Source: Narcine bancroftii
Taxonomy: Eukaryota
Direction of reading: 5' to 3'
Assembly (NCBI RefSeq): GCF_036971445.1
Contig: NC_091470.1
Coordinates: forward strand, 190,340,001 to 190,404,000
Length of the DNA stretch: 64,000 nucleotides
Position numbers and translations under genes: made by a program. The notes beneath the pieces were generated by a model, which saw only the letters and a list, made by a program, of their open reading frames with translations, did no database searches and had not been told where the DNA came from. Positions 9,700 through 45,735 of this stretch are shown in pieces; position 1 is the stretch's first letter, and each line of letters begins with the position of its first letter.

Positions 9700-10242
9700 G
9701 GACTGAGGTGCAGGGGATGGGTGTGCCTGTCGATAGGGCGGGCGGGTTGGAAGGGAGCGGGCTGGAGGCGCAGGTTGCATGGCGAGGTAGGGGCAGGTTT
9801 GCTGTGAACCTGCGGGGAGCGCGGACTGGATGTGGAGCCTATTCCCGGGGTGAGCGGGGCGAGGGGATTGGAACGGTGGTTAGTCCCCGAACACTGTCCC
9901 CCGCGCCGTGACAGCGCAAGCTGCCTTCCACTTCCTTCTCCTGACTTGTGGATAGGACGACTCCAACGCCCATCCCTTCTCCCTTCCTCGTCGCTTCCAG
10001 CAGAGCAGAGCGTGTCACTCCGGACGGAGCTGGTTCCGTGATCAGTCGCCGGGATGGAGAGTTGGAACGGACGCTTGTCGCTCCTCGCCCTGTCCGCTCT
10101 CTATTCTGTCTCGGGGAGCCTCTCAGGTAAGTCCGGGGGTAAATGCTTTTGGCGGAATTCCGCTACCATCTTCTTAAAATCCCACAGAAGCAGGATTTTT
10201 TTTCATGGACAAGTGGGGAAATGCGGGGTTTTGCAACAGCGC
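9700..10242 (+). promoter_or_regulatory. CpG-rich promoter / first-exon region of the MHC class I-like gene
   Basis: Local CpG enrichment, GC-box-like motifs, inverted CCAAT (ATTGG ~9867), directly upstream of the leader exon. Confidence 0.6.
10054..10126 (+). CDS. MHC class I-like heavy chain, exon 1 (signal peptide)
   Basis: MESWNGRLSLLALSALYSVSGSLS plus CAG|GTAAGT phase-1 donor; splices in frame to the alpha1 exon. Confidence 0.8.
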
Positions 10243-11567
10243 TGTGAGAAACAGAAGTACCTTCACAGAAATTGCTGGAGACAAAAATTGAGAACAAAGA
10301 ACATTTATGATACAACAATGCAAAGTTGGGTGCTTCCCCTCACCCTGGGAATACACACACACTCTGGGGTTCACCCAACTTTTATACAGTTCATTTCAGT
10401 GTAGAGGTACCCTCCCCCCCCACCCCCCCCCCTAACATTCTTCTGCCTTCTGGATAAGTTTGGCATTAGGCAATCCTGTCTGCCTACCTGCTGTTTCTGT
10501 GAACTTGGAGGACCAGGAGGTATCCTATCTCATCATGTCATTGTCCTTATTGTCCTTGTCCTTATTCACAAACCTGCCTTTGTCCTTATTCACACCTTCC
10601 CGAACCTCAGGGCTACAACCTTCTTATGCAGAACTTGCTAATTCTGTCTAAAAGGCAAGAAGACCCTTATCTTATTCAGACTAACTTCCTACATTCTATT
10701 ATCTATTATCTATCCTTTCATACTGGCTTTATTCATCTCTCATATTTTCATATTAGTTTTACTCATCTCTCACAATCCTCACTTATCTTTTAGCTACGCT
10801 TCGTGAATTCTCAACTGGAATGTAACTTGGTCTTTTCCCCAGCGAGTCAGTAAACGAACTGCAGTCTCAACATCATCAGACAATTTGGGAAACATACATC
10901 CTTTGGGTTATAGTGATCTGACGAGGGGTCCGTTGAATTAAATACTGCACACGTCTTTAGGCAGGGGAGCACCATAATGGCCAGAATAGCGAGTCCAGCT
11001 GCTTAGTTATCTGATTGTCCCGTGCTTCCTTATCAGACTCCAGTTACCAATAAAAAGTCTAGTCCATCCTGTGAGAGATAGGTAAAACTAATATGAAAAT
11101 ATGAAAGATGAAGAAAACTAGTATGGATATATGTAATGAATAAAGCCAGTATGAATAAGATAAGGATAGATAATAGAATGTAGGAAGTAAAGTTAGTCTT
11201 TTAGACCGAATTAACAAGTTCTGCATATAAGAAGTTAGTAAGCCCTGAGAGTCGGGAAGGTGTGGATGAGGACAATGACATGATGGGACATCAACAGGAT
11301 ACCCCCTGGTCCTCCAAGTTCACAGAAACAGCACGTAGGCAGACAGGATTACCTAATGCCAAACTCATCCAGGAGGCAGAAGAATGTAAGGGGGAGGGTA
11401 CCTCTACACTGAAATGAACTGTATAAAAGTTGGGTGAGCCCCAGTGTGTGTGTGTATTCCCAGGGTAAGGGGAAGCACCCAACTTTGCATTGTTGTATAA
11501 TAAATGTTCTTTGTTCTCAATTTTTGTCTCGAGCAAATTTTGTGAAGGTACTTCTGTTTTTCACAAG

Positions 11568-11585
11568 TGGGGGCTCGTCCGGGAT
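11568..11585 (+). promoter_or_regulatory. Primer-binding site, tRNA-Pro
   Basis: TGGGGGCTCGTCCGGGAT 2 nt after the LTR end, the MLV-type PBS-Pro; also at 20160-20177 (-) and ~55362 (+, one G short). Confidence 0.95.
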
Positions 11586-12918
11586 CCCTCTCCCTCCACT
11601 GACAGAGTGCCCGATGACGAGGGTAGGTGCACCCCGGCTGATTCAGCTGGACTCACGGACGGCGGGTGACTGGTCAGTGGATGAAGCGAGTGATATCCGA
11701 GAAGAGGCATTGAGAACAAACGACGGGAGGACTTTAAGGAAGCGCGCTAGGAATAGCTACTGGATCCCGATAAGAGGAATTTTACTTACCTGTTAGTATG
11801 GGAGGTGTGAGTGGCAAGGGAAATAGTCCTAAAGAAGGACGGGACAATCAGATAACTAAGCAAAGTCCGTTAGGATTAATGCTATCTGATTGGGCTGCGG
11901 GGAAAACCCGTGGGAAAGACAAACAGACCATGGTCAGGTATTGCTGTCTGGAATGGGTTAAAAAACCCGATAAAAGGGAATTCGGTATATTGGCCAAAGT
12001 TCGGATCCGATGAGGACTGGATGTGTCAGGCATTGAACATCTGGCTCTATCAAAATCAAAGAAATAATATTGAGAGCAGAGAATATGCAGCCTAGCCTGC
12101 TGGCTCAGTGGATCGGTTGATCAACTGGTTTTGAATGAAAAGGAATGTAAGGACAAGAAGGATGAGGAACCTTTTGTCCCTGAAACACAAGGATGGGATG
12201 TGTTACATTCCCTTCCTCCACCTTATGCTCCTCCTATGCCAGCTCCTATTTTTCCCCTCTCTCCTATGCTCTATCCTTCTTCACCTTCCCCTCCTCCCCC
12301 ACAGCTAAAGAAAGGAGTAGGGGTGGTATGATGACCTGTTCACAAAGTACTAGATTACCACCTCAATTGACAAGAGAGGGAGGAGACTTTGATTCAAAAC
12401 AAGTGTGAGACCCTCCGGGAGGGAAGGGCAGAACCCTTTGATTCATTTCCCGGAGAGCAGGAATTTAGACATTATAAAGGAGAGGATAAGCCAGAAATTA
12501 ACTGGATGAGACCTTTATGGGAAGTTCCCATGGGAGGGGGTCTCGGTTTCGTAAATGTGCCCCTGACTAGTACGGAGGTGCGTAATTTTAAGAGAGAATG
12601 CCCAATAAACAGAAAGGAAAGGCTAAGATTTTGATGCAGGCAGTCAAGGAAGTCGTGGAGGGACAGCAAGGAAAGGGTAGGGACTGTGTGCCAGCTCCTG
12701 GACATTAGGATGAGCTCCGGGAGTGGGAGAGTATATACCAGAGGAGGGGCAAGGGTAGAGGGGAATTCCAGGGACGACGACCGTTCCCGGGACCTCATGG
12801 TAATCCTGGTAGGAATTGGGAAACAGGAGCATTAGTTTGCTACCATTGTAAAAAGGAGGGACATTTTAAGAGAGAATGCCCAATGTGATCCAGGGAGACA
12901 CGATCTTACGCACTGATG

Positions 12919-13814
12919 TGTTGGAATATAGGGGTTAAGTAATCATAGAAAATATGTTGAATATATGCTTATGTACTATTCAGTTTGTATACATGAATCC
13001 AGTACTATGTAACAATTTAATATTTACCTCATGGTGAAGGGAAAGAGTAATGTAAGTAAGGGGCAGCCACAGTATGTAGCAAAGTTGGCTGATTACAGTA
13101 GGTTTAGAATTGCCTGCTCCCAAAATACAAGAGAGGATATGTATGAAACAATTTAGTAGGAATGTTAAGGCAAAAGGAGGTGTTGATTAGCACAAACAAA
13201 AAGAATCCTGACAGAGACTGTCAGAAACAAAGAGAATGGAATCAGTAAGAAGGCTATAAGACAGAAGGAGGTGTTGAGTAGAACAGAAGAATATGGCCAG
13301 ATGAGAACAAAGAAATAATTAGAAATATCTGGGGTATGAATTGATTTCTGATCAAAACAACAGGATATTGTGAACTTGAGGATTAAGATGGGAGCTCTTC
13401 ACACCAGATAACTGCAGAGCAGGAAATTACTCGTTATAAATCTTATGCAAGAAATCTAGCAAAGAAACCCAACTTTTGTTCTGTATGATAATGAAATCTA
13501 GCAAAGGAAGCCAACTTTTGTTCTGTATGATAATGAAATCTAGCAAAGGAAGCCAACTTTTGTTCTGTATGATAAGGTTGAGCTATATAAATTGTAGAGA
13601 CTGGACAATAGAGGTCAGTCTTGGGGAATATCTCACTGTGCAGGTGACCTATGAACTAACGACTGAACCAGAGCTCTATTAAGCTTTATTCTTGTGCTTG
13701 TAATAAACTGATTGTTGAACCGAATACCTTCTCCTATCACTTCATTTAACGAACACGCTGGACTCAGACGACACATAGACTAAATTAAGGGTAGGGTAAA
13801 GCCAGAGTCCGACA
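12919..13814 (+). mobile_element. Solo LTR of ERV family B with 4-bp TSD
   Basis: TGTTGG...CCGACA; TSD GATG (12915-12918 / 13815-13818); TATA ~13584, AATAAA ~13702; homologous to LTR 55504-56170. Confidence 0.92.
13451..13574 (+). repeat. Three 42-bp tandem repeats in LTR-B U3
   Basis: GAAATCTAGCAAAGGAAGCCAACTTTTGTTCTGTATGATAAT starting at 13451, 13493 and 13535. Confidence 0.9.
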
Positions 13815-13836
13815 GATGGAAGCAGATTATGAATAG

Positions 13837-14829
13837 GTTGGGGAGGGGGGGGGTCACGGTTCTCAGTCAATACACACCGTGGGGCTGCACGGAGAACCAT
13901 TGATAAATTTAAGCATAGGACCCCACAGTGACAAGATGACCTTTTTAGTAGATTCTGGGGCAGCCCGGACTAGTATTTTACAACCACCCGAGGATGTTAA
14001 GATAGAGGGGACAGTGATGATTTCGGAAGTAGGAGGAAGAGATTTTATGGTCCCTGTATTAAGGGATGTAAGAATACAAATGGGAGAGAAGATAGTAACG
14101 GAGGACATTCTACTAGTTCCCCAAGCTGGAGTTTGTTTGTTAGGACGAGATTTACAGGACCAATTGGCTATCGGCACCAGACCACAGGAATCAGGTATCG
14201 GGGTTCAATTGTATGTATTAACTGAGGAGGATCGGGAACTAATAAATCCTGGAGTATGGGCAAAAAGAGGCAATAGAGGAGTGTTAGATATTCCTCCCCT
14301 GCAAGTTACTTTAAAAGATCCTGAGCAAGTAATTAGACGAAAGCAGTATCCAATTCCGATGGCTGGCCGAAAGGGGCTGCAGCCAGTAATTGACTAGTTG
14401 GTGAAAGATGGTATACTCGAACCTTGTATGTCAGCTTTTAATACCCTTACCCTTGAAGCGAACAACCAGTACATATCCAAATATTTAAAGGGACTTTCTG
14501 CCTCTCTATACGAATTAAAACGGAAGGGTTTATTAGCTCAAAACCCACCCCTGGAGTATCCTATTCATTCTATTAAATCTGGTGATTGGGTATATGTAAA
14601 AGCATGGCAAGATCACCAACTAAAACCTGTCTGGGATGGCCCCTATTGTGTACTTTTGATTATAGACACTGCAGTGCGAACGAAAGAAAAGGGGTGGACT
14701 CACATAGAACGAATTAAACAAGCTGCAGATCCACGGACTAACGACATTGATAATCTACCCTCCACCTGGCGTGCAGTCCTTCATCCTTCTGATCTGAAAG
14801 TTATACGAGGCCGGGAAAAAGTGCTGTAA
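13837..14829 (+). pseudogene. pol: ERV-A pro plus internally deleted pol (RT N-terminus fused to IN C-terminus)
   Basis: FLVDSGA and LLGRD protease motifs; RKQYPI...ILEPCMSAFNT joined in frame at ~14445 to GDWVYVK...WDGPY. Confidence 0.88.
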
Positions 14830-15961
14830 TGTTGTTTTTACCATTTGCTGTTTTGTTTACTTGTTATTTCCCAATTTTTGGGAAATCACCAAATTGCTCA
14901 CAATGTATTAAGTCCTCCTGGAATAGGGGCAGCAGAGGTGACAATTATTTACCTTTAGAATGCAGACAGGGCCAGGGCGCAGGTATAGAGTATAGTCATA
15001 GTGGGGTACTTTATTTAGTATGGGTTAATATAGGATCCCAACATGGACCAGGGGAACAGAATGCCCCTAGGGGAGTAGAATTGGTTTGTATTCCGGCCTC
15101 TACAGATATTAAAAAGAGGAGTTTTAAAGAGATAGCACAAAGAAAATGGTGGGACAATGACAGACAGAATGTTAGTCAGGATTGTACATGTAGCAGAGAT
15201 AGAGTGAATACATATGCTAATGTCACAGACAGGCTGCAACTCACAGGTTCAGTGATACTTATGCTAATGTTCGCAGACAAGCTGTAACTCACAGGTTAAG
15301 TGACAAGAAACACCCCTCCCCAACTTGGTCTCCTGTAAATCATCCTTTGGGTCACACAGACATTCGGAATGTTAAGAACCACCACTGTAAGGGGAGTTCC
15401 AGTTGTAAACGACGTAAGCTGCTCCAGAACACCACAGCTGCTTGGCATTTAAATCATTTAATCAGACTCCAGGCAGCCTTGGAGATCATCACCGAACAGA
15501 CAGTGATGGCCCTGAATTTTTGGGCTGAAGAAAGACGACAGATACAAGCCACAGTTCAACAAAACCGCCTGGCTCTCGATTACTCGTTGGATGCTGAAGG
15601 CAGCGTTTGTGAAAGACTGGTTAATGACAATGATCACAAAGGTCAGGCGGATAAAGACACTTCTTCAGGAGTTCGAAAATCTTCCCATGCCCAGGTTCAG
15701 ACTCGGCAACCTTGGACCAGTGTGGAATGGACTAGACTTTTTATTGGTAACTGGAGTCTGATACCCACAGCCCTTATAGCAGCTGAACTCGGTATTCTGG
15801 CCATTATGGTGCTCCCCTGCCTAAAGACGTGTGTGCAGTATTTAATTCAACGGACCCCTCATCAGAACCAAAGGATGTATGTTTCCCAAATTCTGTCTGA
15901 TGATGCTGAGACTGCAGTTCGTTTACTGACTCGCTGGGAAAAAGACCAAGTTTACAAGTAA
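14829..15961 (+). pseudogene. env: ERV-A env relic (ERV3-type, multiply deleted)
   Basis: Signal peptide; LNHLIRLQAALEIIT; QQNRLALDY immunosuppressive domain; hydrophobic anchor. Confidence 0.85.
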
Positions 15962-16536
15962 TACATTACAGTTGAGAATTCACGAAGCCTAGCTATAAGA
16001 AAAGTGAGGATTGTGAGAGATGAGTAAAACTAATATGAAAGATGAAGAAAACTAGTATAGATATATGTGTAATGAATAAAGCCAGTATGAATAAGATAAG
16101 GATAGATAATAGATAATAGAATGTAGGAAGTAAAGTTAGTCTGAATAAGATGTCTTCTAGCCTTTTAGACAGAATTAGCAAGTTCTGCATATAAGAAGTT
16201 AGTAATGAGAGTCAGGAAGGTGTGAATAAGGACAATAAAGGACAATGACATGATGGGACAAACACAGGATTCCCCCTGGTCCTCCAAGTTCACAGAAACA
16301 GCACGTAGGCAGACAGGATTGCCTAATGCCACACTCATCCAGGAGGCAGAAGAATGTAAGGGGGAGGGTACTTCTATATTGAAATAAACTGTATAAAAGT
16401 TGGTTGAGCCCCAGTGTATGTGTGTATTCCCAGGGTAAGGGGAAGCACCCAACTTTGCATTGTTGTTATAATAAATGTTCTTTGTTCTCAATTTTTGTCT
16501 CAAGCAAATTTTGTGAAGGTACTTCTGTTTCTCACA

Positions 16537-17318
16537 AAGTCTGAACCTGGGCATGGGAAGATTTTCGAACTCCTGAAGAAGTGTCTTTAACCGCCTGACC
16601 GTTGTGAGCATTGTCATTAACCAGTCTTTCACAAACGCTGCCTTCAGCAGCCAACGAGAGCCAGGCGGTTTTGTTGAACTGTGGATCGTATCTGTTGTCT
16701 TTCTTCAGCCCATAAATTCAGGGCAATAGCTGTCTGTTCGGTGATGATCTCCAAGGCTGCCTGGAGTCTGATTAAATGATTTAAATGCCAAGCAGCTGTG
16801 GTGTTCTGGAGCAGCTTTTCAACTGGAACTGCAACTGGAACATTCCGAATGTCTGTGTGACCCAAAGGATGATTTACAGGAGACCAAGTTGGGGAGGGGG
16901 GTTTCTTGTCACTTAACCTGTGAGTTGCAGCCTGTCTGTGAACATTAGCATATGTATTCACTCTATCTCTGCTACATGTACAATCCTGACTAACATTCTG
17001 TCTGTCATTGTCCCACCATTTTCTTTGTGCTATCTCTTTAAAACTCCTCTTTTTAATATCTGTAGAGGCCGAAATACAAATCAAATCTTCTCCCCTAGGG
17101 CCGTTCTGTTCCCCTGGTCCATGTTGGGATCCTATATTAACCCATACCCCACTATGACTATACTCTATATCTGCACCCGGTCTGCATTCTAAAGTTAAAT
17201 AATTGTCACCTCTGCTGCCCCTGTTCCAGGAGGACTTAATACATCGTGAGCAATTTGGTGATTTCCCAAAAATTGGGAACCAACAAGTGAACATAACAAC
17301 AAATCGTAAAAACAGCAT
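16537..17318 (-). pseudogene. env: ERV-A env relic, outer copy (continues at 11069-10775)
   Basis: 224-aa ORF 16644-17318 closely similar to the inner copy's env. Confidence 0.85.
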
Positions 17319-17675
17319 TACAGCACTTTTTCCCGGTGTAGTGTAACTTTTAGATCCGAAGGATGAGGGACTGCACGCCAGGTGGAGGGTAGATTATCAA
17401 TGTCTTTAGTCCATGGATCAGCAGCTTGTTTAATTCGTTCTATGTGAGTCCACCCCTTTTCTTTCGTTCGCACTGCAGTGTCTGTAATCAAAAGTACACA
17501 ATAGGGGCCGTCCCAGACAGGTTTTAGTTGGTGATCTTGCCATGCTTTTACATATACCCAATCACCAGGTTTAATAGAATGAATAGGATACTCCAGGGGT
17601 GGGTTTTGAACTAATAAACCCTTCTGTCTTAATTAATTACCAATGTATTCCCAGGATTTATTAGTTCACGATCCT

Positions 17676-18797
17676 GTTTACTTGGTGAAATGCTAATTAA
17701 AAGTGAATAGCTGCAATTTAATGCCTTATCTGTTTTTACAATAGTTTCCAAAATCGTTGTGGGGCAAGACACCGTTTACCATAACAATCTGACATTTCTT
17801 TGTGTTAGTGTAAATGTTATATTTAGAATTATTGTAAAAAGAAACACAAACCATATTTCCATGGGTTTTGAATATATGAGACCTTATTAAAATGCAGTTG
17901 AAGCTGCTTGTCTGTATGGGGCAACCAACCTGCAATTTGTTAGAGTGAGTACATAACAGACATTGCAGCACTCAAGCATGTTTGAGCCTCCCTGAACTCT
18001 ATTAGCGAACCCGTATTTGACCTTCACAACTGCAGTACTATTAACCCAGCAGTCTTTTAGACACCACTTCCAGATGAATTTGAAAAACGAGATCATGATT
18101 ATTTACAATGTAACTTCCGCACGACCAGATTTAAATATAAACCTGATGAATGGGGGAAGTTATCACAAACTAAATTACAGCGGCAATACAGAGAAATTGT
18201 GCTGAGGCATGAATTTCACTCCGGAGGAAAATGCACCAGAGAAATCAATCATTAAACTTATTGGCTTCCCCAGAGGTTTCTTTATTCTCCAAAGGTGGGC
18301 GATCTTTAAGCTCACGGACCTTGACTGCTGAATGTGTAGAAGAAATGTACTAAATCTATTGAGAGGGCTCCATACCGCTAACTGCAAGACAGGAGCCTGA
18401 AGCCTCAGTTTCAAGTGAACAGAATACAATTCATTAGTGCCACACGTGCTTAAAGGGACATGCACACTCCCCCTTCAACTGGTTGATCCAGCCACTTTAC
18501 ACATCGGATCCTTTCTTTATCTTACATACACTTAAAAAAAGTAAGACGTATAGAACTCACCCTACTTGCGCAAACATTTCTCCCTGCAAATGTTATAACA
18601 TCGCTCAACTCTCACGTACTCCCTGTGCAAAATCACGTTTGAATACAATTTATTTCATAAAATGAAATTAACTGGTAGTTAAATTCGCTCATTCTAGAGT
18701 ATTGATAAACGATCATTTATGACATTTACATTTTAGCATGAATTTTAATTAATATTGGTCAGTGACTGAAGTGAGAAGTCGTGATTTATGAAATTAT
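17676..18797. other. Non-retroviral ~1.1-kb insert replacing the gag 3' end and protease of the outer ERV-A
   Basis: Flanks are collinear with inner-copy positions ~12743 and ~14228; no TSD, TIR, poly(A) or recognisable ORF. Confidence 0.6.
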
Positions 18798-19947
18798 CTC
18801 TGGTCTCTACTCTCCCACTCCCAGCACTTCTCCCAACATCCAGAAGCTGGCACACAGTCCCTAACATTTCCCTGCTGTCCCTCCACAACTTCCTTGACTA
18901 CCTGCATCAAAATCTTAGCCTTTCCTTTCTGTTTATCCTCAGAACTCTGGACATATACCCTTTGTGCGATCTGCAAAAGCTGTGTTATTCCCTGTTCATG
19001 CCAATTCTCAGTCTTCTGCAATTTTCTCCTGATGTCTGGGGCTGAATTAGTAATGAAGCCCGTTAATACCCATGTATATATATTTGGTCCCAAAAATTGA
19101 TCTAATTGTTTGGAACATCCCTAGGATCCTCTATCAGGGAGGTCATTTCTCTCTTAAAGTTATGCACCTCCGTAATAGTCAGGGGCACATTTTCGAAACC
19201 GAGACCCCCTCCCACGGGAACTTCCCGTAAAGGTCTCATCCAGTTAATTTCTGGCTTATCCTCTCCTTTATAGTGTCTAGGTTCCTGTTCTCCGGGAAAT
19301 GAATCAAAGGGTTCTGCCCTTCCCTCCCGGAGGGTCTCACACTGTTCTGAATCAAAGTCTCCTCCCTCTCTTGTCAATTGAGGTGGTAACCTAGTACTTT
19401 GTGAACAGGTCATCATACCACCCCTACTTTCTTCTCCTTTCTTTAGCTGTGGGGGAGGAGGGGAAGGTGAAGAAGGGTAAAGCATAGGAGAGAGGGGAAA
19501 GATAGGAGCCGGCATAGGAGGAGCATAAGGTGGAGGAAGAGAATGTAACACATCACATCCTTGTGTTTCAGGGACAAAAGGTTCCTCATCCTTCTTGTCC
19601 TTACATTCCTTTTCATTCAAAACCAGTTGATCAACCGATCCACTGAGCCAGCAGGCTGCATATTCTCTGCTCTCAATATTTTCTCTTTGATTTTGATAGA
19701 GCCAGATGTTCAATGCCTGACACATCCAGTCCTCATCGGATCCGAACTTTGGCCAATATACCGAATTCCCTTTTATCGGGTTTTTAACCCATTCCAGACA
19801 GCAATACCTGACCATGGTCTGTTTGTCTTTCCCACGGGTATTCCCCGCAGCCCAATCAGATAGCATTAATCCTAACGGACTTTGCTTAGTTATCTGATTG
19901 TCCCGTCCTTCTTTAGGACTATTTCCCTTGCCACTCACACCTCCCAT
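18798..19947 (-). pseudogene. gag: ERV-A gag, outer copy
   Basis: 281-aa ORF 19102-19947 (matrix, PPPY, capsid start), then a frameshifted capsid remnant. Confidence 0.85.
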
Positions 19948-20679
19948 ACTAACAGGTAAGTAAAATTCCTCTTATCGGGATCCAGTAGCTATTCCTAGCA
20001 TGCTTCCTTAACGTCCTCCTGTTGTTTGTTCTCAATGCCTCTTCTCGGATATCACTCGCTTCATCCACTGACAAGTCACCCGCCGTCCGTGAGTCCAGCT
20101 GAATCAGCCGGGGTGCACCTACCCTCGTCGTCGGGCACTCTGTCAGTGGAGGGAGTGGGATCCCGGACGAGCCCCCATTTGTGAGAAACAGAAGTACCTT
20201 CACAGAATTTGCTCGAGACAAAAATTGAGAACAAAGAACATTTATTATACAACAATGCAAAGTTGGGTGTTTCCCCTTGCCCTGGGAATACACACATACA
20301 CTGGGGCTCACCCAACTTTTATACAGTTCATTTCAGTGTAGAGGTACCCTCCCCCCCTAACATTCTTCTGCCTCCTGGATAAGTTTGGCATTAGGCAATC
20401 CTGTCTGCCTACGTGCTGTTTCTGTGAACTTGGAGGACCAGGGGGTATCCTGTCGGTGTCCCATCATGTCATTGTCCTTATTCACACCTTCCTGACTCTC
20501 AGGGCTGTAACCTTATATGCAGAACTTGCTAATTCTGTCTAAGGCTAGAAGACCCTTATCTTATTCAAACTAACTTTACTTCCTACATTCTATTATCTAT
20601 TATCTATCCTTAATCCTACTCATACTGGCGAACTCAAAAAGGTAAGATGGGTTGTTTTCATTGGCCGGTGAAACTCGAG

Positions 20680-27178: not shown

Positions 27179-27427
27179 CCTCACACAGCCTGAAGTATTT
27201 GTTCAACTTTTCCTTCAACGTTCCCCAACAGCCGACTTTCTCCAGGGTGGGGATGCTGGATGACCTGCAGATAGATTACTACAACAGCTCCTTGATGCAG
27301 GTTGAACCCAGGAAGCCATGGATGAAAGGCAGCCTCCTGACTAAGTACTGGAATCAGCAAAAAGAAATCTCACGCTCAGTCGAAAAGCTTTTATCTGAAG
27401 AACTGAGAATATACGCCTCATTTTTCA
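27179..27427 (+). CDS. MHC class I-like heavy chain, exon 2 (alpha1)
   Basis: Polypyrimidine-CAG acceptor and GTATGT donor, phase 1-1; ASHSLKYLF...VGMLDDLQIDYYNS...EPRKPWM...YWNQQ. Confidence 0.92.
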
Positions 27428-29600: not shown

Positions 29601-29994
29601 ATTAGAAACAGATTCCCAATTATCCTGGGGAAGTTGCAGCCTTTCAGAATCCTATCCCTGGAGACCCCTCCTGCCTCCCTCCGACAGGTAGAAACACTGC
29701 GGAGACCATCAGGCTCACTGACCATGCTGGCTTTTCATGTGGCTGTCAGGGCAGAGGGTATGGTGAGCTCCCCATCCTCGACACATGGTGAACTTTTCTG
29801 TCGGTGATGGGTGTCCTCATCTCTCCTGCTACTGCCATGGTCCCTGGATATGATCCCCAGATGGGAGTCCCTGGGTCATATTCAACATTCAGTGCTAGGA
29901 TTCAAACTGCAGTTTGCTGGTTCTACACACAACCCCTTCCTCCTCCCACTGCGTGTGCCTTCTCTGTACATAGTGCACATAGTACACGACACCT

Positions 29995-32900
29995 CATTGT
30001 GACCCCTTCTCTGAACACGCACCTACACACAGATCACAGTCCCTCTCTGTGACCCCTTCTCTGTACACACACCCACACAGTACACAGTCCCTTCCTATGA
30101 CCCATTCTCTGTATACACACCCACACACAGTACAGAGTCCCTCCCTGTGACCCTTTCTCTGTACACACACCCACACAGTACGCAGTCCCTCACTGTGACC
30201 CCTTCCCTGTACACACACCCACACAGTACGCAGTCCCTCCCTGCGACTCCCTTCTCTCTACATGCACCCACACAGTGCACAATCCCACATTGTGACCCCT
30301 TCTCTGTACACACACCCACACACAGTACACAGTCCCTCCCTGTGACCCCTTCTCTGTACACACACCTACACAGTACACAGTCCCTCACTGTGACCCCTTC
30401 TCTGCACACACACCCACTCAGTACGCAGTCCCTCCATGACCCCTTCCCTGTACACACACCCACACAGTACGCAGTCCCTCCATGACCCCTTCTCTGTACA
30501 CACACCCACACAGTGCAGTCCCTCCCTGCGACTCCCTTCTCTCTACATGCACCCACACAGTGCACAATTCCACATTGTGACCCCTTCTCTGTACACACAC
30601 CCACACACAGTACACAGTCCCTCCCTGTGACCCCTTCTCTGTACACACACCCACACAGTACGCAGTCCCTCCCTGTGACCCCTTCTCTGTACATGCACCC
30701 ACACAGTGCACAATCCCACATTGTGACCCCTTCTCTGTACATGCACCCACACAGTGCACAATCCCACATTGTGACCCCTTCTCTGTACACACACTCACAC
30801 AGTACGCAGTCCCTCACTGCAACTCCCTCCTCTGTACATGCACCCACACAGTGCACAATCCCACATTGTGACCCCTTCTCTGTACACACACTCACACAGT
30901 ACGCAGTCCCTCACTGCAACTCCCTCCTCTGTACATGCACCACACAGTGCACAATCCCACATTGTGACCCCCTTTTCTGTACACACACCCACACAGTACG
31001 CAGTCCCTCACTGTGACTCCCTTCTCTGTACATGCACCCACACTCTGCACAATCCCACATTGTGACCCCTTCTCTGTACACACACCCACACAGTGCAGTC
31101 CCTCCCTGTGACCCCTTCTCTGTACATGCACCCACACAGTGAACAATCCCACATTGTGACCCCTTCTCTGTACACACACTCACACAGTACGCAGTCCCTC
31201 ACTGCAACTCCCTCCTCTGTACATGCACCACACAGTGCACAGTCCCTCACTGTGACCCCTTCTCTGTACACACACCCACACAGTATACAGTCCCTCACTG
31301 TGACCCCTTCTTTGTACACACACCCACACAGTACGCAGTCCCTCACTGCGACCCCTTCTCTGTACACACACCCACACAGTACACAGTCCCTTCCTATGAC
31401 CCATTCTCTGTATACACACCCACACACAGTACAGAGTCCCTCCCTGTGACCCCTTCTCTGTACACACACCCACACAGTACGCAGTCCCTCACTGTGACCC
31501 CTTCCCTGTACACACACCCACACAGTACGCAGTCCCTCCCTGCGACTCCCTTCTCTCTACATGCACCCACACAGTGCACAATCCCACATTGTGACCCCTT
31601 CTCTGTACACACACCCACACACAGTACACAGTCCCTCCCTGTGACCCCTTCTCTGTACACACACCTACACAGTACACAGTCCCTCACTGTGACCCCTTCT
31701 CTGCACACACACCCACTCAGTACGCAGTCCCTCCATGACCCCTTCCCTGTACACACACCCACACAGTACGCAGTCCCTCCATAACCCCTTCTCTGTACAC
31801 ACACCCACACAGTGCAGTCCCTCCCTGTGACCCCTTCTCTGTACATGCACCCACACAGTGCACAATCCCACATTGTGACCCCTTCTCTGTACATGCACCC
31901 ACACAGTGCACAATCCCACATTGTGACCCCTTCTCTGTACACACACCCACACACAGTACACAGTCCCTCCCTGTGACCCCTTCTCTGTACACACACCTAC
32001 ACAGTACACAGTCCCTCCCTGTGACCCCTTCTCTGTACACATACCCACACAGTACGCAGTCCCTCACTGTGACCCCTTCTCTGTACACACACCCACTCAG
32101 TACGCAGTCCCTCCATGACCCCTTCTCTGTACACACACCCACACAGTGCAGTCCCTCCCTGTGACCCCTTCTCTGTACATGCACCCACACAGTGCACAAT
32201 CCCACATTGTGACCCCTTCTCTGTACATGCACCCACACAGTGCACAATCCCACATTGTGACCCCTTCTCTGTACACACACTCACACAGTACGCAGTCCCT
32301 CACTGCAACTCCCTCCTCTGTACATGCACCCACACAGTGCACAATCCCACATTGTGACCCCTTCTCTGTACACACACTCACACAGTACGCAGTCCCTCAC
32401 TGCAACTCCCTCCTCTGTACATGCACCACACAGTGCACAATCCCACATTGTGACCCCCTTTTCTGTACACACACCCACACAGTACGCAGTCCCTCACTGT
32501 GACTCCCTTCTCTGTACATGCACCCACACTCTGCACAATCCCACATTGTGACCCCTTCTCTGTACACACACCCACACAGTGCAGTCCCTCCCTGTGACCC
32601 CTTCTCTGTACATGCACCCACACAGTGAACAATCCCACATTGTGACCCCTTATCTGTACACACACTCACACAGTACGCAGTCCCTCACTGCAACTCCCTC
32701 CTCTGTACATGCACCACACAGTGCACAATCCCACATTGTGACCCCCTTTTCTGTACACACACCCACACAGTACGCAGTCCCTCACTGCAACTCCCTCCTC
32801 TGTACATGCACCACACAGTGCACAATCCCACATTGTGACCCCCTTTTCTGTACACACACCCACACAGTACGCAGTCCCTCACTGTGACTCCCTTCTCTGT

Positions 32901-33625
32901 ACATGCACCCACACTCTGCACAATCCCACATTGTGACCCCTTCTCTGTACACACACCCACACAGTGCAGTCCCTCCCTGTGACCCCTTCTCTGTACATGC
33001 ACCCACACAGTGAACAATCCCACATTGTGACCCCTTCTCTGTACACACACCCACACACAGTATACAGTCCCTCACTGTGGCCCCTTCTCTGCACACAGAC
33101 CCACACAGTGCACAGTCCCTCACTGTGACCCCTTCTCTGTACACACACCCACACAGTATACAGTCCCTCACTGTGACCCCTTCTTTGTACACACACCCAC
33201 ACAGTACGCAGTCCCTCCATGACCCCTTCTCTGTACACACACCCACACAGTGCAGTCCCTCCCTGTGACCCCTTCTCTGTACACAGACTCACACAGTGCA
33301 CAGTCCCTCACTGTGACCCCTTCTTTGTACACACACCCACACAGTACACAGTCCTTCCCTGTAATCCTGCGCTCTGTACACACACTCACACTCAGTATAC
33401 AATCCCTCACTGCGACTCCCTCCTCTGTACACACACCTACACACAGTACCTTATAGTAATGCCAGGCTCTATGCACACATTGCAACCTTACATGGTCCCT
33501 CACTATGATCCCACGCTCTGCACTCACACTGATGCCACTGTACAATGTACCCCACTATGATCTTGCGCTCTGTGCACAAACTGATATAACTACACCATCC
33601 ATCACTGTGATCCTGTGGTCTGTAC
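29995..33625. repeat. ~3.6-kb minisatellite, ~48-bp unit
   Basis: TGTGACCCCTTCTCTGTACACACACCCACACAGTACGCAGTCCCTCAC and variants; edges degenerate. Confidence 0.97.
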
Positions 33626-33859: not shown

Positions 33860-34360
33860 GTTATATCTCCCAGTGGCCACCCATTTCAATTTTACATCCC
33901 ATTCCCTTGTTGACATGGGTCCCTTGCCCTTGGTCTCATACATAGACAGACTGAGTCCACCTACAAACTGGAAGAACACCACCTCATCGTCCATCTGGGC
34001 ACCTTCCAACCGGACGACATTTACATCTTTGGTTTCTGTTAGCCCTCTACTTCTCTTTTCCTTTAGCTCTGTCTCTCTCTCTCCTTGTTGCTCTCTCTCC
34101 TTTCCTGCAGCTCTCTATTCTCAGAGCCAGCCCCTGCCCCAATTGATTCACACCTTTCTTCTGCTGTCCTCCTATCTGTGCCCAATTATCACCTTTTGGC
34201 AGTTGGACTGTGGTTCTCCCCCTGCCCTTTCTTTCGTTCTCCCCAGTCCATTAATTTTGACACCTTCCTGCTTTGCACTCGTACCTTGAAGAAGGGCTCA
34301 GGCCTGAAACATCGGTTATATATATCCTTACTTTCTATGACTCTGCGAGACCTGTTGAGA
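33860..34360 (+). mobile_element. Penelope-like 3' fragment
   Basis: VATHFN...KLEEHHLIVHLGTFQP. Confidence 0.6.
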
Positions 34361-34646
34361 TTCAATTTATATTTAAATTAAATTTAGACACACAGCATGG
34401 TAACAGTCCTTCCGGCGCACAAGCCAGTGTCACCCAATCACACCAATTAACCTACAAGACCCATATGTTTTTGAAGTTTTGGATAGGGGAGAGCATACAA
34501 ACTCCTTAAAGACTGCGCGGGATTCGAACCAGGGACGCTGGCTCTGTACAACGTTGTGCTTACTGGCTACATTAATTCTGCCACCCTCCCTCCAACATCT
34601 CTGATTTTTTTTTTACTATGAAGATTAACCTGTTCATCCTTCACAG

Positions 34647-34913
34647 GCATCCACTACTTGGAGGGGATGTGGGGCTGTACACAATCTGAATCTACAACCA
34701 ATGTTTTTGTAAATTTAAAGACGGAAACTGCTGGAGAGATTGACTGTGATATTATCATAATGAAGTGTTCTGCCACCGGTATCTTTGCTGCCACAAATGA
34801 CCCTCTAAGCATATTGGATGAAGAATCCTCGCCTATCCGTGCAGTGAATGCCAGCTGCATTTCCGACTTGCAGAATATCCTCAAGCTTGGTAAAGCGGCC
34901 CTGGAAAGAAAAG
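34647..34913 (+). CDS. MHC class I-like heavy chain, exon 3 (alpha2)
   Basis: CACAG acceptor, AAG|GCAAGT donor, phase 1-1; IHYLEGMWGC (C101)...SCISDLQNILKLGKAALERK (C164). Confidence 0.88.
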
Positions 34914-35231
34914 GCAAGTTGGAGCATCTCAGTGTGCATCCTCTGGCTGGGAGGGTGGCGGAGTTCCCTATCTGGAGTCAACCGATCCGGGTTGGTGAAA
35001 GCTCTCCCAATCTGGGATGGTGACAGATCTCCTGATCTGGAAACTGAGGGAGCTCTGGATCCAGGGCAGCGTGGGGGTTCCCAATCCAGGATTCTCCTGG
35101 CCCACGATGGTGAGGGAGCTCCCGATCAATGATGTTCCTGATACGAGCTTTAATTTTAGCCAATGAGACCATCCTGCATCTGAGAGTTTGGGGATGATCT
35201 CATCTTGGGCATCCGAGGATTCCCTGAATTG

Positions 35232-35592
35232 GGAACATAAGAAATAGGATCAGGATTCGGCCATCTGGCCTGTCAAGCCTGCTTTGCAATTCAATGAGAT
35301 CATGGCTGATCTGATAGGCTCATCTCCACCTACTTGCCTTTTCCCCATATCCCTTAATCCCCCTACCATGTAAAAATCTATCCAACCTTGTCTTAAATTT
35401 GCTGTTCAAAGGGCAGCAATTTCCACAGATTCACCCCCTCATCTCCATTCAAAATCTTCTACCCTGGATCCTAAGGCTATGTCCCCTAGTTCTAGTCTCC
35501 CCCACCAATGGAAACAACTTGCTTAATTCTATCTGATCTACGCCTTTCATAATTTTATACATTTCTATCAGATCCCCTCTCACTCTTCTAAC
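35232..35592 (-). mobile_element. CR1 LINE 3' end
   Basis: AACATAAGAAATAGGA...AATGAGATCATGGCTGATC terminal pattern; similar copy at 53358-53833. Confidence 0.7.
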
Positions 35593-35770
35593 AGGGCGTG
35601 GAGCCTTGACCTGTGACTAATCTTAAGCTGGAGACTTAAATCCTGGGTTGCTGGAGGGGATGGTTGTGTAGGTGGCTGTTGGAGGTGGCAGGGTTAGACA
35701 GCCATGATTCCAGCCCTCAGACTGGCAGGTCTGTGTTGGGAAAGTGATGTGATTTACCATTCTTCCCCAG

Positions 35771-36046
35771 TTGCTCCAGAGCTGGTGCTGTTCATCAGGA
35801 GCCTGTCTCCTGAAGAGGGCGATACTCTTGTGTGCCTCATCACTCCCTTTTACCCCCGTGCCATCAACGCCACTTGGCTGAGGAATGGGCAGGCCGTCTC
35901 AGCTGGCAGCAACGCGACTGTTCTACAAAACCAAGACGGGACGTACTGGATGGAACTGCTCATTGAGCTGCAAGGTCGTGATCCACGGACCTTCTCCTGT
36001 CAGGTTCAGCACAGCAGCCTGTCGGAGACACTGACCGTGAGGGCAG
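35771..36046 (+). CDS. MHC class I-like heavy chain, exon 4 (alpha3, C1-set Ig)
   Basis: TLVCLITPFYPRAINATWLRNG...NQDGTY...FSCQVQHSSL; CCCCAG acceptor, CAG|GTAGGT donor. Confidence 0.95.
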
Positions 36047-36084
36047 GTAGGTCACTTTACAGGACACAATGTGCTCTGTGGAGA

Positions 36085-37095
36085 GGAACACAAAAGGTTG
36101 CAGACGCTGCGACTGCGGTTAGAAGGCTGGGATGTTGGAGGAACTCAGCAGGTCCATCAGCGTCCAGAGGAGGGAAAGATATTTCACCGACATTTAGGAC
36201 CCAAGCCGCCCTTTGTCAAGGCATGAGCAAAAAGCAAGCAGGCACCTGAATTAAAAGGCTGTGGTTGGAGGGAAGATGGAGGAGCACGGGCAGAAGGATA
36301 GGAAAAGTGAGAAATAATTTGTTGGGTGGGGGGGGGGGTGAGGGTGGATCTGTGAATGCAGAACTGGAGGAAAGGAAACATAGGGAAAGGGGAAGAGAGA
36401 GAGATGGAAACCGAAGAAGTTGGAGGGGGCCCAATCGGAAGATGAGGTGATGTTCCTCCAATTTGCGGGTGGTCCCATTTCTAGTCCATGGACAGACATG
36501 TCGGAAAGGGAAATGGGGTGGCGAATTGAAATGGGTGGCCACTGGGAAGTCCATGCTATTGTGGCTGACAGAGCTGAGGTGCTCAGTGAAGCGATCTCCC
36601 AGTTTGCATCCAGCCTCCCCCAATGTAGAGGAGACCATAGCAGGAGCTCCGCATGCAGTGGATGACCCCTGCATCAATGAAGCGATCTCCCAGTCTGTGC
36701 CCAGCCTCCTAACGTAGAGAAGACCACAGCAGGAGCTCTGCATGCAGTGGATGACCCCTGCATCAATGAAGCGATCTCCCAGTCTGTGCCCAGCCTCCTA
36801 ACGTAGAGAAGACCACAGCAGGAGCTCCGCATGCAGTGGATGACCCCTGCATCAATGAAGCGATCTCCCAGTCTGTGCCCAGCCTCCTAATATAGAGAAG
36901 ACCACAGCAGGAGCTCCGCATGCAGTAGGTGACCCCTGTAGATGCACAAGGGAACTGTTGCTTCAGTTGGAAGGTGTGAGTGAAGGACTTGAGGAAAGGG
37001 TCAGGCCTGAAACGTCAGTTCCATATCTTTACCTCCTATGGTCGCCGCGAGGCCAGCTGAGATCCTCCAGCATTCCTGTGTTTTGGCTAATTACG
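36085..37095 (-). mobile_element. Penelope-like element with a four-copy ~89-bp internal tandem repeat (36588-36940)
   Basis: GEAGCKLGDRFTEHL...PVATHFNS...KLEEHHLIFRLG; repeat units start at 36588, 36679, 36768, 36857. Confidence 0.7.
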
Positions 37096-43190: not shown

Positions 43191-43569
43191 TTATTCATTT
43201 ATTCGATATGAATGATGTTGATCTTCACAGTTCTGCACCCAAGGTTGTTCAACAAGAAACTCCAGAGGTAGGGAATGTTGACTGAGACCCAGAGGACTGT
43301 TTGCTTTACCCTATCCATTGCACACTGCTTTTTCCGCCTGTTCCGCAGATCCAGGCAAGGCGGGGTGTCTTGAGGGGGAAATGGTGTCGCGTAGAGAAGC
43401 TTGATATGGAAAGGGAAGGGGAATGGAGAGCAACACATAGGGAATTGAACGATGGGCTTGGGAGTGAAACCTGTGGTGAAATCGTAGTTAGACTGTGTTG
43501 AAAGGTCTGCCATTCAGCAGGTGTTTGTCTGGACAGAAGAATCTCAATCATAAGGTTGGCACGACACTA

Positions 43570-44235
43570 GGCGCTTTCAAACTGCCTTGTAAAATGGGGT
43601 TAACTGGGCAATTTGCCCAGATAGTGCCCCACTCACAAGGCAGCTTGAAAGGATCCGACCCAGTCAACTAGCTCCATAATCAACCAGGTCCCTGCCCTAC
43701 CTCGGAGGTAGTCAGCGAACCCAGTTACACTTACCTAGGTCTCGCCCACCGGCGGCTTGAAAACAAAAATGGCCGACCCAGTTACTCCTGTGATGTCACA
43801 GGAAAACCCCAGCTGAAGTGTCTGTCATAATCAGAGGGGAGAGAGGAGTCGCTGCCACGTTGGGGGGAGCACAATTGGGGGTAGTGAGATCGGTGACTTG
43901 AGGAGGAGAGGTCACTGCCATGGTGGGGGAAGGAGGGAGAACCATGCTACAATCGATGGGGGGGGGGGGTCGGAGGGATCAGCTGCTGCGGGGGGAGAGG
44001 AGTGGGGTTGGGGGGCGACTGACTGCCGTTGTGGGGGGCGGAGAGATTTACCAATAGTTCCCCTGAGTGTGTGACGTGGCACTTACTGTGCCATCATGGG
44101 GATGGGATCCCCCTTAAATTGCCGGGTTGGCGATTTAATGAGTCCATCCCCCTGCAGCTTAAAAGGTGCTGGAAGCACCTTTGCCCCACTAATTGCAGCA
44201 GGAGGGTTACCCAGATACTGCAACTTAAAAACACC
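43570..44235. mobile_element. Possible PIF/Harbinger-like MITE
   Basis: Imperfect TIR GGCGCTTTCAAACTGC / GCAACTTAAAAACACC with internal CAGCTTGAAA-like repeats. Confidence 0.35.
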
Positions 44236-45649
44236 TATTATTACAGTGCCAGTGACCCAGATTGGAATCCAGCACTGTCTGTAAGGACTCTGTATGTTCT
44301 CCCTGTGACCTACGTGGGTTTCCGCTGGTTTGTTCTGGTTTCCTTCCTTCCTTCCTTCAAACTGTACAGGGGCTGTAAATTCATTGGGATATTTGAGCAG
44401 CATGGAAGGGCCTGTTATGGTGCTGCACATCTACATTTAAATTAAATACATTTAAATAAATGTGAGGTGTTTTGCTGTGTGAAACAAAACTGTGCATTGT
44501 TGATCAGGAATGTGTTCATCAGCCTGGGGCTATCATGACTGGGGAGGGGCAGAATTCCATTTACATGACAGCTTTGCAATAAAATATCTCCTTTCCCAGC
44601 ATTAGGGTTCCTCGTGATACAAATACACAGCTCTGAAATAATTTCAAACAGGAATCAAACATAATTTTATTTTGAAACAATCTCCCCTGGAGGCTTTCTC
44701 CACCGAGAGATTAAAAACTCAAGGGGGAGGGTTAAGGGTGAAAGGGAAAATGTTTAAAAGGAACATTTAGCGGGAGTGGTATGGGATGTGGAATGAGCTG
44801 CCAGCTGAAGTGGTGAATGCAGGCTCAATTTTAATTTTTTAAAATTTAGACATACAGCACGGTAACAGGCCCTTCTGGTCCACGAGCCCAATTACACCAA
44901 TTAACCGGTAACCCTCATACATTTTGAAGGGTGCGAGGAACTGCTCACGCACTCAGGAGAACTATCGGTAAGTCTTCCCCACCCTCGCCCCCCCCAACCA
45001 GCTGTCAGTCGTCCCGACCCCACTCCTCTCCCTCCCGCTGCAGTCAACCCCTCCGCCCCCATGGCAGCCGACCCCTCCGCCCCATGGCAGCTGACCCACG
45101 CCCCCCCCCCCCCCGATAACCATTCAAGACTCTCAGATTCATGAAACAAAATTGATTGGTTTATTTGTAGAGATGAAATACTTGTCCTGAATGTATATCG
45201 TTTGTCTGTCTATACATGTGTTATATCTGGTTGTGTGTCGGCATGTTTTGCACCGAGGACCAGAGAACGTTGTTTTTTAGGGTTGTGCAATCAAATGACA
45301 ATAAACTTTACTTGATTTGAAACCAGAGCACCCGAAGGAAACCCACACATACATAAGGAGAACGTACAAATTCCTTACAGTGCTGGATACGAACCTGGGT
45401 CACTGGTGCTGTAATAGCGCTGCACTAAGTTTAGACATGAAAGAAAAGTTTGGACAGGTACATGGATGGGGGGAATGGTGGCTGAGGTATAAAGGGTGAT
45501 AGTCTGGGTACAGGTTGGTGGAACTAGTTCAACACAGACCAGCTGGGTCTGTTTCTGTGCTGTAGTGTTCTACAATTCTATGCACCTTATCCGGTGCCAT
45601 CATTTCTCCGTATTTCACCTAATGTGCTCCGTCTTTACTTGGTGGGCAG

Positions 45650-45735
45650 GAGTTAGTCGGCCTTATGAGGTGTTTCGAGCTGATCCCATTATGGGCCTGA
45701 TGGTGGTGCTGGCAGTGGTGATTGGAGCAGCGTAG
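45650..45735 (+). CDS. MHC class I-like heavy chain, exon 5 (connecting peptide plus hydrophobic segment, ends TAG)
   Basis: GGCAG acceptor, phase 1; GVSRPYEVFRADPIMGLMVVLAVVIGAA*; the only TM-like non-repeat segment I found downstream of alpha3. Confidence 0.65.

What the first reader, a model, noticed from the sequence alone, without database searches (positions are those of the whole stretch)
10054..45735. Open, highly divergent nonclassical MHC class I-like gene hidden among transposons
Seen: five exons (73+249+267+276+86 nt = 951 nt), all introns phase 1, giving an uninterrupted 316-aa leader-alpha1-alpha2-alpha3-hydrophobic tail protein, while most surrounding elements are decayed. Known: classical class I keeps Y7, Y59, R/Y84, T143, K146, W147, Y159, Y171 and the N86 glycan. 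By-eye alignment here keeps only Y7 and Y59. Alpha1 ends about 6 residues early with no N86, the 143-147 stretch aligns as NDPLS (a proline in the helix), and Y159->A, Y171->I. Inference: a molecule that does not present peptides classically, possibly a new or very derived member of the chondrichthyan nonclassical lineages (UBA/UCA/UDA/UEA).
Basis: partly seen in the sequence, partly recalled or inferred. Interest (0 to 1): 0.8.

Follow-up and report, generated by a model that had tools for sequence, protein, structure and literature searches.

The report
Electric-ray ortholog of shark UFA gene
The five-exon gene is real, intact and transcribed, but it is the lesser electric ray's copy of UFA, an already named nonclassical MHC class I lineage of sharks and rays with a solved structure, and RefSeq already holds exactly this protein.

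Summary
Exons 10054-10126, 27179-27427, 34647-34913, 35771-36046 and 45650-45735 (+) give an open 951-nt, 316-aa frame with all introns in phase 1. Assembled RNA contigs from four runs join exons 3 and 4 exactly there, and carry exon 2 sequence before exon 3 and exon 5 sequence after exon 4.

The protein is nonclassical: it keeps only Y7 and Y59 of the eight residues that hold peptide ends. It is not a new lineage.
- The genome is Narcine bancroftii, and RefSeq isoform X1 (XP_069775823.1) is identical to the model.
- All three ectodomains best match PDB 8gm8, "shark nonclassical MHC class I, UFA" (230 bits; UGA 98, classical 97, CD1 83).
- 25 proteins from other sharks and rays form the family, and their tree follows the species tree.

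Groove-facing residues are hydrophobic. This fits the reported, still unpublished, CD1-like lipid binding of UFA. Lipid binding and GPI anchoring are inferred, not shown.

Interest is low.

The parts
10054..10126 (+). Exon 1, coding part: start codon and signal peptide (MESWNGRLSLLALSALYSVSGSLS), donor gtaagt. The 5' UTR lies upstream; its extent is not determined.
   Evidence: Identical to the start of RefSeq P0033/P0001. Leader conserved in orthologs.
27179..27427 (+). Exon 2, alpha1 domain (249 nt, phase 1). It is short, with no N86 sequon.
   Evidence: Pfam MHC_I 1.3e-10. 8gm8 UFA 2.1e-15. An RNA contig loose end before exon 3 equals the last 30 nt of this exon.
34647..34913 (+). Exon 3, alpha2 domain (267 nt). 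It carries the canonical C101/C164 pair and an extra cysteine pair (precursor C141/C148). It is followed by a GC donor (gcaagt).
   Evidence: The only significant PDB hit is 8gm8 UFA, 2.8e-13. Contigs in 4 runs join 34913->35771. Cysteines.
35771..36046 (+). Exon 4, alpha3 C1-set Ig domain (276 nt).
   Evidence: Pfam C1-set 2.3e-15. 8gm8 1.5e-24. Covered without differences by contigs of 4 runs.
45650..45735 (+). Exon 5: connecting peptide, a 15-residue hydrophobic C-terminus (IMGLMVVLAVVIGAA), then the stop codon. There is no cytoplasmic tail, and the end resembles a GPI signal. The 3' UTR continues downstream.
   Evidence: The loose end after exon 4 in run X3 equals the start of this exon. 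The same tail-less ending occurs in all 26 family members.
47159..47205 (+). Alternative terminal exon of RefSeq isoform X3 (tail RKKEENTYFYIYIH, then stop). It gives a form without the hydrophobic end.
   Evidence: The tail of P0032 was located in the window with an AG acceptor at 47157-47158. No read evidence was looked at.
11269..20355 (.). Intron 1 content: two copies of an internally deleted gammaretrovirus-like element in inverted orientation, with arms 94-97% complementary.
   Evidence: Inverted repeats I1-I4 and direct repeat D3. Pfam RVP and MLV integrase C-terminal domain.
29958..33449 (.). Intron 2 content: 48-nt minisatellite, 72.6 copies, with strong strand skew.
   Evidence: Tandem Repeats Finder. 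GC skew down to -0.59.

Best explanation
This is the Narcine bancroftii ortholog of UFA, a nonclassical MHC class I lineage found in both sharks and rays. Shown: it is a single, intact, five-exon gene. Its mRNA is spliced as predicted. It encodes a signal peptide, alpha1, alpha2, an alpha3 C1-set domain and a short hydrophobic C-terminus. It has lost six of the eight residues that classical class I uses to clamp peptide ends. Inferred from the family: like shark UFA, it probably folds into a class I platform with a hydrophobic groove that holds lipids rather than peptides (CD1-like in function, not in descent), pairs with beta2-microglobulin, and shows its cargo to innate-like T cells or a similar receptor. 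Because the protein ends right after about 15 hydrophobic residues, preceded by a small-residue cluster, it is probably GPI-anchored or at least tail-less. It would then lack the tyrosine-based endosomal recycling that CD1 uses. Alternative terminal exons would give soluble forms.
For: Identity:
- All three domains best hit 8gm8_A.
- The whole protein scores 230 bits against 8gm8, versus 98 for 9ch4 (UGA), 97 for classical, 95 for MR1 and 83 for CD1.
- Foldseek of the AF2 model (pLDDT 80.5) ranks 8gm8 first. Its title is 'shark nonclassical MHC class I, UFA'; E 3e-26, TM 0.83.
- 25 proteins from other elasmobranchs, 304-321 aa, score 221-305 bits. The next hit scores 83 bits.
- The tree follows the species tree: batoid clade 100/100, with Narcine inside it.

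Functional state:
- The frame is open.
- Spliced contigs occur in four runs.
- Narcine keeps 60 of 66 near-invariant family sites in exons 1-4, like other members, which keep 88-95%.

Non-peptide, hydrophobic groove:
- Only 2 of 8 anchor residues are kept.
- The groove face of the alpha1 helix has mean hydropathy +1.2, against -1.6 in a classical fish class I. The floor is +1.4 against -0.1.

Literature:
- UFA is 'very similar to CD1' in its binding region and MHC-linked (PMC10751288).
- Crystal structure and mass spectrometry suggest lipid binding, reported as a personal communication (PMC12562908).

Tail:
- The same tail-less hydrophobic end occurs in all 26 members.
Against: - Lipid binding is known only from a review's personal communication and from a structure whose ligand I could not inspect. 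Nothing was measured for the ray protein.
- The hydropathy comparison rests on an alignment register and on a single classical outgroup.
- GPI anchoring is a rule-of-thumb reading; no predictor or assay was run.
- By sequence and fold, UFA is no closer to CD1 than to classical class I, MR1, FcRn or ZAG. The CD1-family Pfam model stays below its cutoff (24.2 bits against 35).
- Batoid UFAs carry an arginine at floor position 24, where sharks have Val or Met, so cargo may differ between rays and sharks.
- Narcine's end branch is about 1.3 times longer than those of other batoids.
- The tree holds no named UAA, UBA, UDA, UEA or UGA sequences.
Confidence: 0.8

Rival explanations
1. It is a UFA ortholog, but not an antigen-presenting molecule. 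It would act as a GPI-linked or secreted ligand for NK-type or gamma-delta receptors, or as a lipid carrier, in the manner of ULBP/RAE-1 or zinc-alpha2-glycoprotein.
For: The end is tail-less and GPI-like in all members. RefSeq holds two isoforms without the hydrophobic end. ZAG and FcRn score as well as CD1 against it. There is no acidic CD8-loop equivalent in alpha3 (by eye).
Against: The alpha3 C1-set domain and the platform disulfide are fully conserved, as in beta2m-associated presenting molecules. The review reports CD1d-like lipids bound (PMC12562908). Neither point excludes this reading.
Confidence: 0.15
2. It is a new or very derived nonclassical lineage, distinct from all described ones.
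For: It shares only about 24% identity with a classical fish class I. The alpha2 exon matches no Pfam family. Narcine has a long end branch.
Against: It scores 230 bits against solved UFA, versus 98 or less for anything else. It sits inside a 26-member family whose tree follows the species tree. All flagged features are shared by the family.
Confidence: 0.03
3. It is a decaying or non-functional gene that happens still to be open.
For: It lies among decayed retroelements, with 17-kb and 9.6-kb introns, a non-canonical GC donor, a faster branch, and a unique P->Q change at the otherwise near-invariant 'VLPN' site of alpha3.
Against: The 316-aa frame is open. The mRNA is precisely spliced in four runs, and the GC donor is used. 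Conserved sites are retained at 91%, as in other members. All six structural cysteines and the conserved INATW sequon are present.
Confidence: 0.02

Closest known systems
Shark UFA (PDB 8gm8, 'Crystal structure of shark nonclassical MHC class I, UFA')
   Same: The domain order and lengths are the same, and identity is about 40-55% across alpha1-alpha3. Shared features are the MLDDLQI(D/E)YY motif, the short alpha1 end, the extra cysteine pair in alpha2, the INATW sequon and the loss of peptide-end anchors.
   Different: This is the ray ortholog. It has Arg rather than Met at floor position 24 and Tyr at position 7, where most other sharks have His, Asn, Gln or Ser. Its alpha2 helix region is divergent and its rate somewhat faster. 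The solved construct is the ectodomain only, so the anchor cannot be compared.
Shark UGA (PDB 9ch4)
   Same: It is the other elasmobranch class I lineage said to be CD1-like. It has the same three-domain architecture (PMC12562908).
   Different: It scores only 98 bits and about 25% identity, no closer than classical class I. It is a clearly different lineage.
CD1 (mammals, birds, reptiles)
   Same: The proposed function is the same: a class I-like platform with a hydrophobic groove for lipids. Groove-face hydropathy is shifted in the same direction (PMC10751288).
   Different: There is no specific sequence or fold affinity: CD1 scores 83 bits, below classical and MR1, and the CD1-family Pfam model is below its cutoff. 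UFA has no cytoplasmic tail, hence no YXXZ endosomal sorting motif. It is MHC-linked according to PMC10751288.
Classical MHC class I (for example shark UAA 6lup, HLA-A2)
   Same: The exon-per-domain layout with phase-1 introns, the C101-C164 and alpha3 disulfides, and Y7 and Y59 are all shared.
   Different: It lacks Y/R84, T143, K146, W147, Y159, Y171 and the N86 glycan. It has no cytoplasmic exons and a more hydrophobic groove face.
GPI-anchored class I-like molecules (Qa-2, ULBP1-3, RAE-1)
   Same: The C-terminus ends in a short hydrophobic stretch with small residues about 10 positions upstream and nothing after it. The comparison itself rests on my own knowledge.
   Different: These are unrelated lineages. 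The GPI link of UFA has not been tested.

Membership tests
Elasmobranch UFA lineage | Closest similarity to the solved, named UFA protein, well above every other class I lineage | tested here: met
   8gm8 scores 230 bits, against 98 (UGA), 97 (classical), 95 (MR1) and 83 (CD1). The alpha2 exon has no other significant PDB hit. Foldseek ranks it first with the title naming UFA.
Elasmobranch UFA lineage | Monophyly with UFA-type genes of other sharks and rays, consistent with orthology | tested here: met
   In the 26-member family tree rooted on a catfish class I, the batoid clade has 100/100 support and contains Narcine, and sharks fall outside it. Caveat: no named UAA, UBA, UDA, UEA or UGA sequences were in the tree.
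Elasmobranch UFA lineage | Single or low copy number | tested here: inconclusive
   There is only one locus in the window, and only this gene's three isoforms appear among Narcine proteins found. The whole genome was not searched. Stingrays and mantas have about 5 copies.
Elasmobranch UFA lineage | Linkage to the MHC (class Ib cluster) | not tested
   There are only unchecked notes of this scan: class II genes about 1 Mb downstream, and class I genes 578 kb upstream and 672 kb downstream, on the same piece. This agrees with PMC10751288.
Elasmobranch UFA lineage | Lipid cargo in a hydrophobic groove | not testable with these tools
   The only evidence is a proxy: groove-face hydropathy is +1.2 on the alpha1 helix and +1.4 on the floor, against -1.6 and -0.1 in a classical fish class I.
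Classical (peptide-presenting) MHC class I | Eight conserved residues binding peptide termini (Y7, Y59, Y/R84, T143, K146, W147, Y159, Y171) | tested here: not met
   Only Y7 and Y59 are kept.
Classical (peptide-presenting) MHC class I | Transmembrane segment followed by cytoplasmic exons | tested here: not met
   The stop codon comes directly after 15 hydrophobic residues, in exon 5.
CD1 family | Match to the CD1-type platform model (Pfam PF16497) above its threshold, or a specific sequence affinity to CD1 | tested here: not met
   PF16497 scores 24.2 bits against a cutoff of 35, and only 3 of 27 members match it at all. CD1 chains score below classical and MR1 chains.
CD1 family | Cytoplasmic tyrosine-based endosomal sorting motif | tested here: not met
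   No cytoplasmic residues exist in any family member.
GPI-anchored proteins | N-terminal signal peptide, C-terminal hydrophobic stretch with nothing after it, and small residues at and near a cleavage site about 10 residues upstream | tested here: inconclusive
   The pattern is present (G-V-S, a 10-residue spacer, then 15 hydrophobic residues) and is conserved in the family. No predictor or assay was available.

The most novel reading that the evidence does not exclude
UFA may be, across all sharks and rays, a GPI-anchored lipid-binding class I molecule: a CD1-like function without CD1's endosomal recycling tail, stabilised by an extra hairpin disulfide. In the electric ray it would also be released in soluble forms through alternative terminal exons, one of them derived from a transposon. 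If the still unpublished UFA work does not cover the anchor, this would be a new point about how the oldest lipid-presenting system traffics.
Probability: 0.2. Interest if true: 0.45.

Novelty: already known. Interest (0 to 1): 0.2.

Why it matters
For this scan the result closes the finding. The gene is real and working, but it belongs to a named lineage with a deposited structure, and the exact protein is in RefSeq under a generic, misleading name ('Gogo-A*0501 alpha chain-like').

Its modest value is as annotation. It gives the torpediniform UFA ortholog with junctions 2-3, 3-4 and 4-5 checked against RNA. It shows that the peptide-anchor losses, the short alpha1, the extra cysteine pair and the tail-less end are lineage traits. 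It also shows that UFA is single-copy in sharks, skates and Narcine but multiplied in stingrays and mantas.

UFA itself matters for the question of whether lipid presentation is as old as peptide presentation. That question is already being addressed by the groups that solved 8gm8.

Tried and rejected
- Paper searches for '8GM8', for a primary UFA/UGA paper and for CD1-like molecules in cartilaginous fish found only two secondary mentions.
- The two Almeida et al. J Immunol papers are not held.
- The supplements of PMC10751288 hold no UFA coordinates.
- The terminal exon of isoform X2 (DSNSIEIKQREDVKEAR) is not in the window. Only a similar peptide on the minus strand, inside the retroviral copy at 20001-20018, was found.
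- There is no AATAAA or ATTAAA within 565 nt after the stop codon.
- The findings search for 'microglobulin' gave nothing.
- dN/dS was not computed. No close (torpediniform) ortholog was found, and at about 50% protein identity synonymous sites are saturated. Retention of family-conserved sites was used instead.
The joined model was only translated and compared inside local scripts. Whole-protein searches and the fold used the database proteins P0001 and P0033, which equal the spliced product.
- The idea that the prolines break the alpha2 helix was rejected. In the model, P160 and P170 sit at the starts of helical segments.
Full report
**Observation.** The five proposed exons are at 10054-10126, 27179-27427, 34647-34913, 35771-36046 and 45650-45735 on the + strand. 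Joined in a local script, they give 951 nt and one open frame of 316 codons, with every intron in phase 1. Introns 1, 2 and 4 have GT-AG ends. Searched exon by exon by reference, exon 2 matches Pfam MHC_I (1.3e-10), exon 4 matches C1-set (2.3e-15), and exon 3 matches no Pfam family. A tblastn of family proteins finds no second copy or stray class I exon in the window.

**Transcription.** One search for sequencing runs found four runs of one study and one organism. Three hold about the exon share of the words of the exon 3 to exon 4 stretch and one holds more. I laid their contigs on window 34300-36500.
- All four runs show a joint that skips 857 nt. With the stated 2-nt ambiguity, this equals 34913->35771, so the GC-AG intron is used.
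- There are no differences from the window in either exon.
- In two runs, the contig sequence before 34647 is the last 30 nt of exon 2.
- In one run, the contig sequence after exon 4 is the start of exon 5.
- The runs are labelled RNA only as a guess, but contigs that lack the introns at exact splice sites are spliced RNA.
- The exon 1-2 junction was not seen directly.

**Identity.** A word search with the open frame around exon 4, scoring only the exon part, returned a 100% identical RefSeq protein of Narcine bancroftii.
- The cluster holds three isoforms.
- Isoforms X2 (P0001) and X3 (P0032) share exons 1-4 and end in other terminal exons. The X3 exon lies at 47159-47205 in the window. The X2 exon is not in the window.
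- So the gene is already annotated, under a generic name.

**Lineage.** Each ectodomain exon has the same best solved relative, chain 8gm8_A (2e-15, 2.8e-13, 1.5e-24). For alpha2 it is the only significant hit.
- The whole protein P0001 scores 230 bits against 8gm8. It scores 98 against 9ch4, 97 against the best classical chain, 95 against MR1 and 83 against CD1.
- An AlphaFold2 model built on a 27-sequence alignment (mean pLDDT 80.5) finds 8gm8 first by Foldseek (E 3e-26, TM 0.83).
- The library gives the entry titles. 8gm8 is 'Crystal structure of shark nonclassical MHC class I, UFA' (released 2024-11-27). 9ch4 is the same for UGA.
- The word search with P0001 found 25 proteins of other species, 304-321 aa, from skates, sawfish, stingrays, mantas and eight shark species at 221-305 bits. 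Next came three shorter ray fragments (170-187 bits), and then a catfish class I at 83 bits.
- A maximum-likelihood tree of the family follows the species tree. Batoids form a 100/100 clade that contains Narcine, and sharks lie outside it.
- Narcine's end branch (0.61) is about 1.3 times the path length of other batoids from the same node.
- The tree contains no named UAA, UBA, UDA, UEA or UGA sequences, because I could not fetch them as ids. The PDB scores stand in for that comparison.

I checked them against a classical catfish class I sequence that carries all eight peptide-end anchors.
- Narcine keeps Y7 and Y59.
- It lacks the 84 position and the N86 sequon, because alpha1 ends four residues early.
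- It has D, S and I at 143, 146 and 147, A at 159 and I at 171.
- These are traits of the whole family, not of this gene. Y7 is even replaced by H, N, Q or S in most sharks.

**Signs of constraint.** Narcine keeps 60 of the 66 near-invariant family positions that fall in exons 1-4 (91%). Other members keep 88-95%. All six structural cysteines are present. Where the extra alpha2 pair (precursor C141/C148, about positions 126/133 in HLA numbering) is missing in relatives, both members are missing together in five proteins, with one possible exception. This pattern fits a disulfide.

**Mechanism (inferred).**
- Mapped through the gap-free alpha1-helix alignment, the eleven groove-facing helix positions read YQISVLLEIYF in Narcine and YEKSTNFNTAR in the classical catfish protein. 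Mean hydropathy is +1.2 against -1.6.
- Ten floor positions give +1.4 against -0.1. The whole family behaves alike.
- This fits the two literature statements I could find. UFA is 'very similar to CD1' in its binding region and maps in an MHC class Ib cluster (PMC10751288, unpublished data cited there). Crystal structure and mass spectrometry suggest lipids like those of human CD1d (PMC12562908, personal communication).
- By sequence and fold, UFA is not closer to CD1 than to other class I-like molecules. The likeness is functional and does not establish membership in the CD1 family.

**Anchor (inferred).** All 26 family members stop directly after, or at most three residues beyond, a hydrophobic stretch of about 15-20 residues. 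A small-residue cluster sits about 8-11 positions upstream. The classical outgroup instead has a long transmembrane segment and a tail. This pattern fits a GPI attachment signal, or at least a tail-less anchor. Either way it excludes CD1-type tyrosine sorting. No predictor was available.

**Surroundings.**
- Intron 1 (17 kb) holds two inverted copies of an internally deleted gammaretrovirus-like element.
- Intron 2 holds a 3.5-kb minisatellite of 48-nt units.
- Intron 4 (9.6 kb) holds retroelement debris and an 89-nt tandem repeat.
- Upstream lies a Pao-type peptidase fragment. Downstream, on the minus strand, lies a retroviral element with long open pol frames, which other notes of the scan cover.
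- Unchecked notes of the scan place class II genes about 1 Mb away and class I genes 0.6-0.7 Mb away on the same piece. This agrees with MHC linkage, but I did not test it.

- Read laying was given 2201 letters.
- No N stretch was touched.
The joined step was left out, and database ids that equal the spliced product were used in its place.

**Verdict.** The gene is real and expressed, and it is correctly called nonclassical. It is the electric-ray UFA ortholog, so it is already known in kind and already annotated as a gene.

Noticed in passing
window 47159-47205 (+): Alternative terminal exon used by RefSeq isoform X3 (…G RKKEENTYFYIYIH stop). It has a pyrimidine tract and an AG acceptor, and would give a UFA form without the hydrophobic end.
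   Followed up: partly
outside the window; a look-alike at window 20001-20018 (-): The terminal peptide of isoform X2 (DSNSIEIKQREDVKEAR) is not encoded in the window. It resembles a peptide (…ENKQQEDVKEAC) read from the retroviral copy in intron 1, so that isoform probably ends in an exonised copy of the same element elsewhere.
   Followed up: partly
window 34914-34919: The intron 3 donor is GC (gcaagt), and spliced contigs of four runs use it. Whether the GC donor is conserved in other UFA genes was not checked.
   Followed up: partly
window 11269-20355: Two copies of one internally deleted gammaretrovirus-like element (protease directly followed by the integrase C-terminal domain) lie head to head inside intron 1. 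Their arms are 94-97% complementary, so the pre-mRNA could form a very long hairpin.
   Followed up: partly
window 29958-33449: A 48-nt minisatellite with 72.6 copies and 82% matches, with extreme strand skew (GC skew to -0.59), sits in intron 2. It produces many long spurious ORFs on both strands.
   Followed up: no
window 36583-36938: An 89-nt tandem repeat with 4 copies and 93% matches lies in intron 4, just after exon 4.
   Followed up: no
family alignment A2, position 24 (HLA numbering); P0001 residue 47: Nearly all ray and skate UFAs have Arg (or Lys) at groove-floor position 24, where all shark UFAs have Val or Met. One stingray/manta paralog pair has Met, like the sharks. The cargo may differ between the two groups.
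   Followed up: no
P0018 (Heptranchias), P0020, P0024, P0025, P0027 (stingray paralogs): The extra alpha2 cysteine pair is lost as a pair (Y/W, N/gap or L/gap) in these members. Two of the stingray paralogs also lack C164.
   Followed up: partly
P0010-P0020, P0024-P0027: UFA is single-copy in the eight sharks, the skate and Narcine. There are about five copies in Mobula birostris and in Hemitrygon akajei, two in Pristis and at least two in Hypanus. This is a stingray/manta expansion of a 'single-copy' lineage.
   Followed up: partly
window about 9733-10053: One RNA contig (run X2, 1290 nt) extends 394 nt beyond the 5' end of exon 2. Exon 1 therefore either has a 5' UTR of at least 321 nt or is preceded by a further exon. 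An ATTGG box at about 9866 and an ISRE-like TTCCACTTCC at about 9926 were seen by eye only.
   Followed up: no
window 56592-63458 (-) and 8475-8885 (+): Downstream there is a retroviral element with long open RT, RNase H, integrase and zinc-knuckle Gag frames. Upstream there is a Pao/BEL peptidase fragment. No cellular neighbour gene was found in the window.
   Followed up: partly
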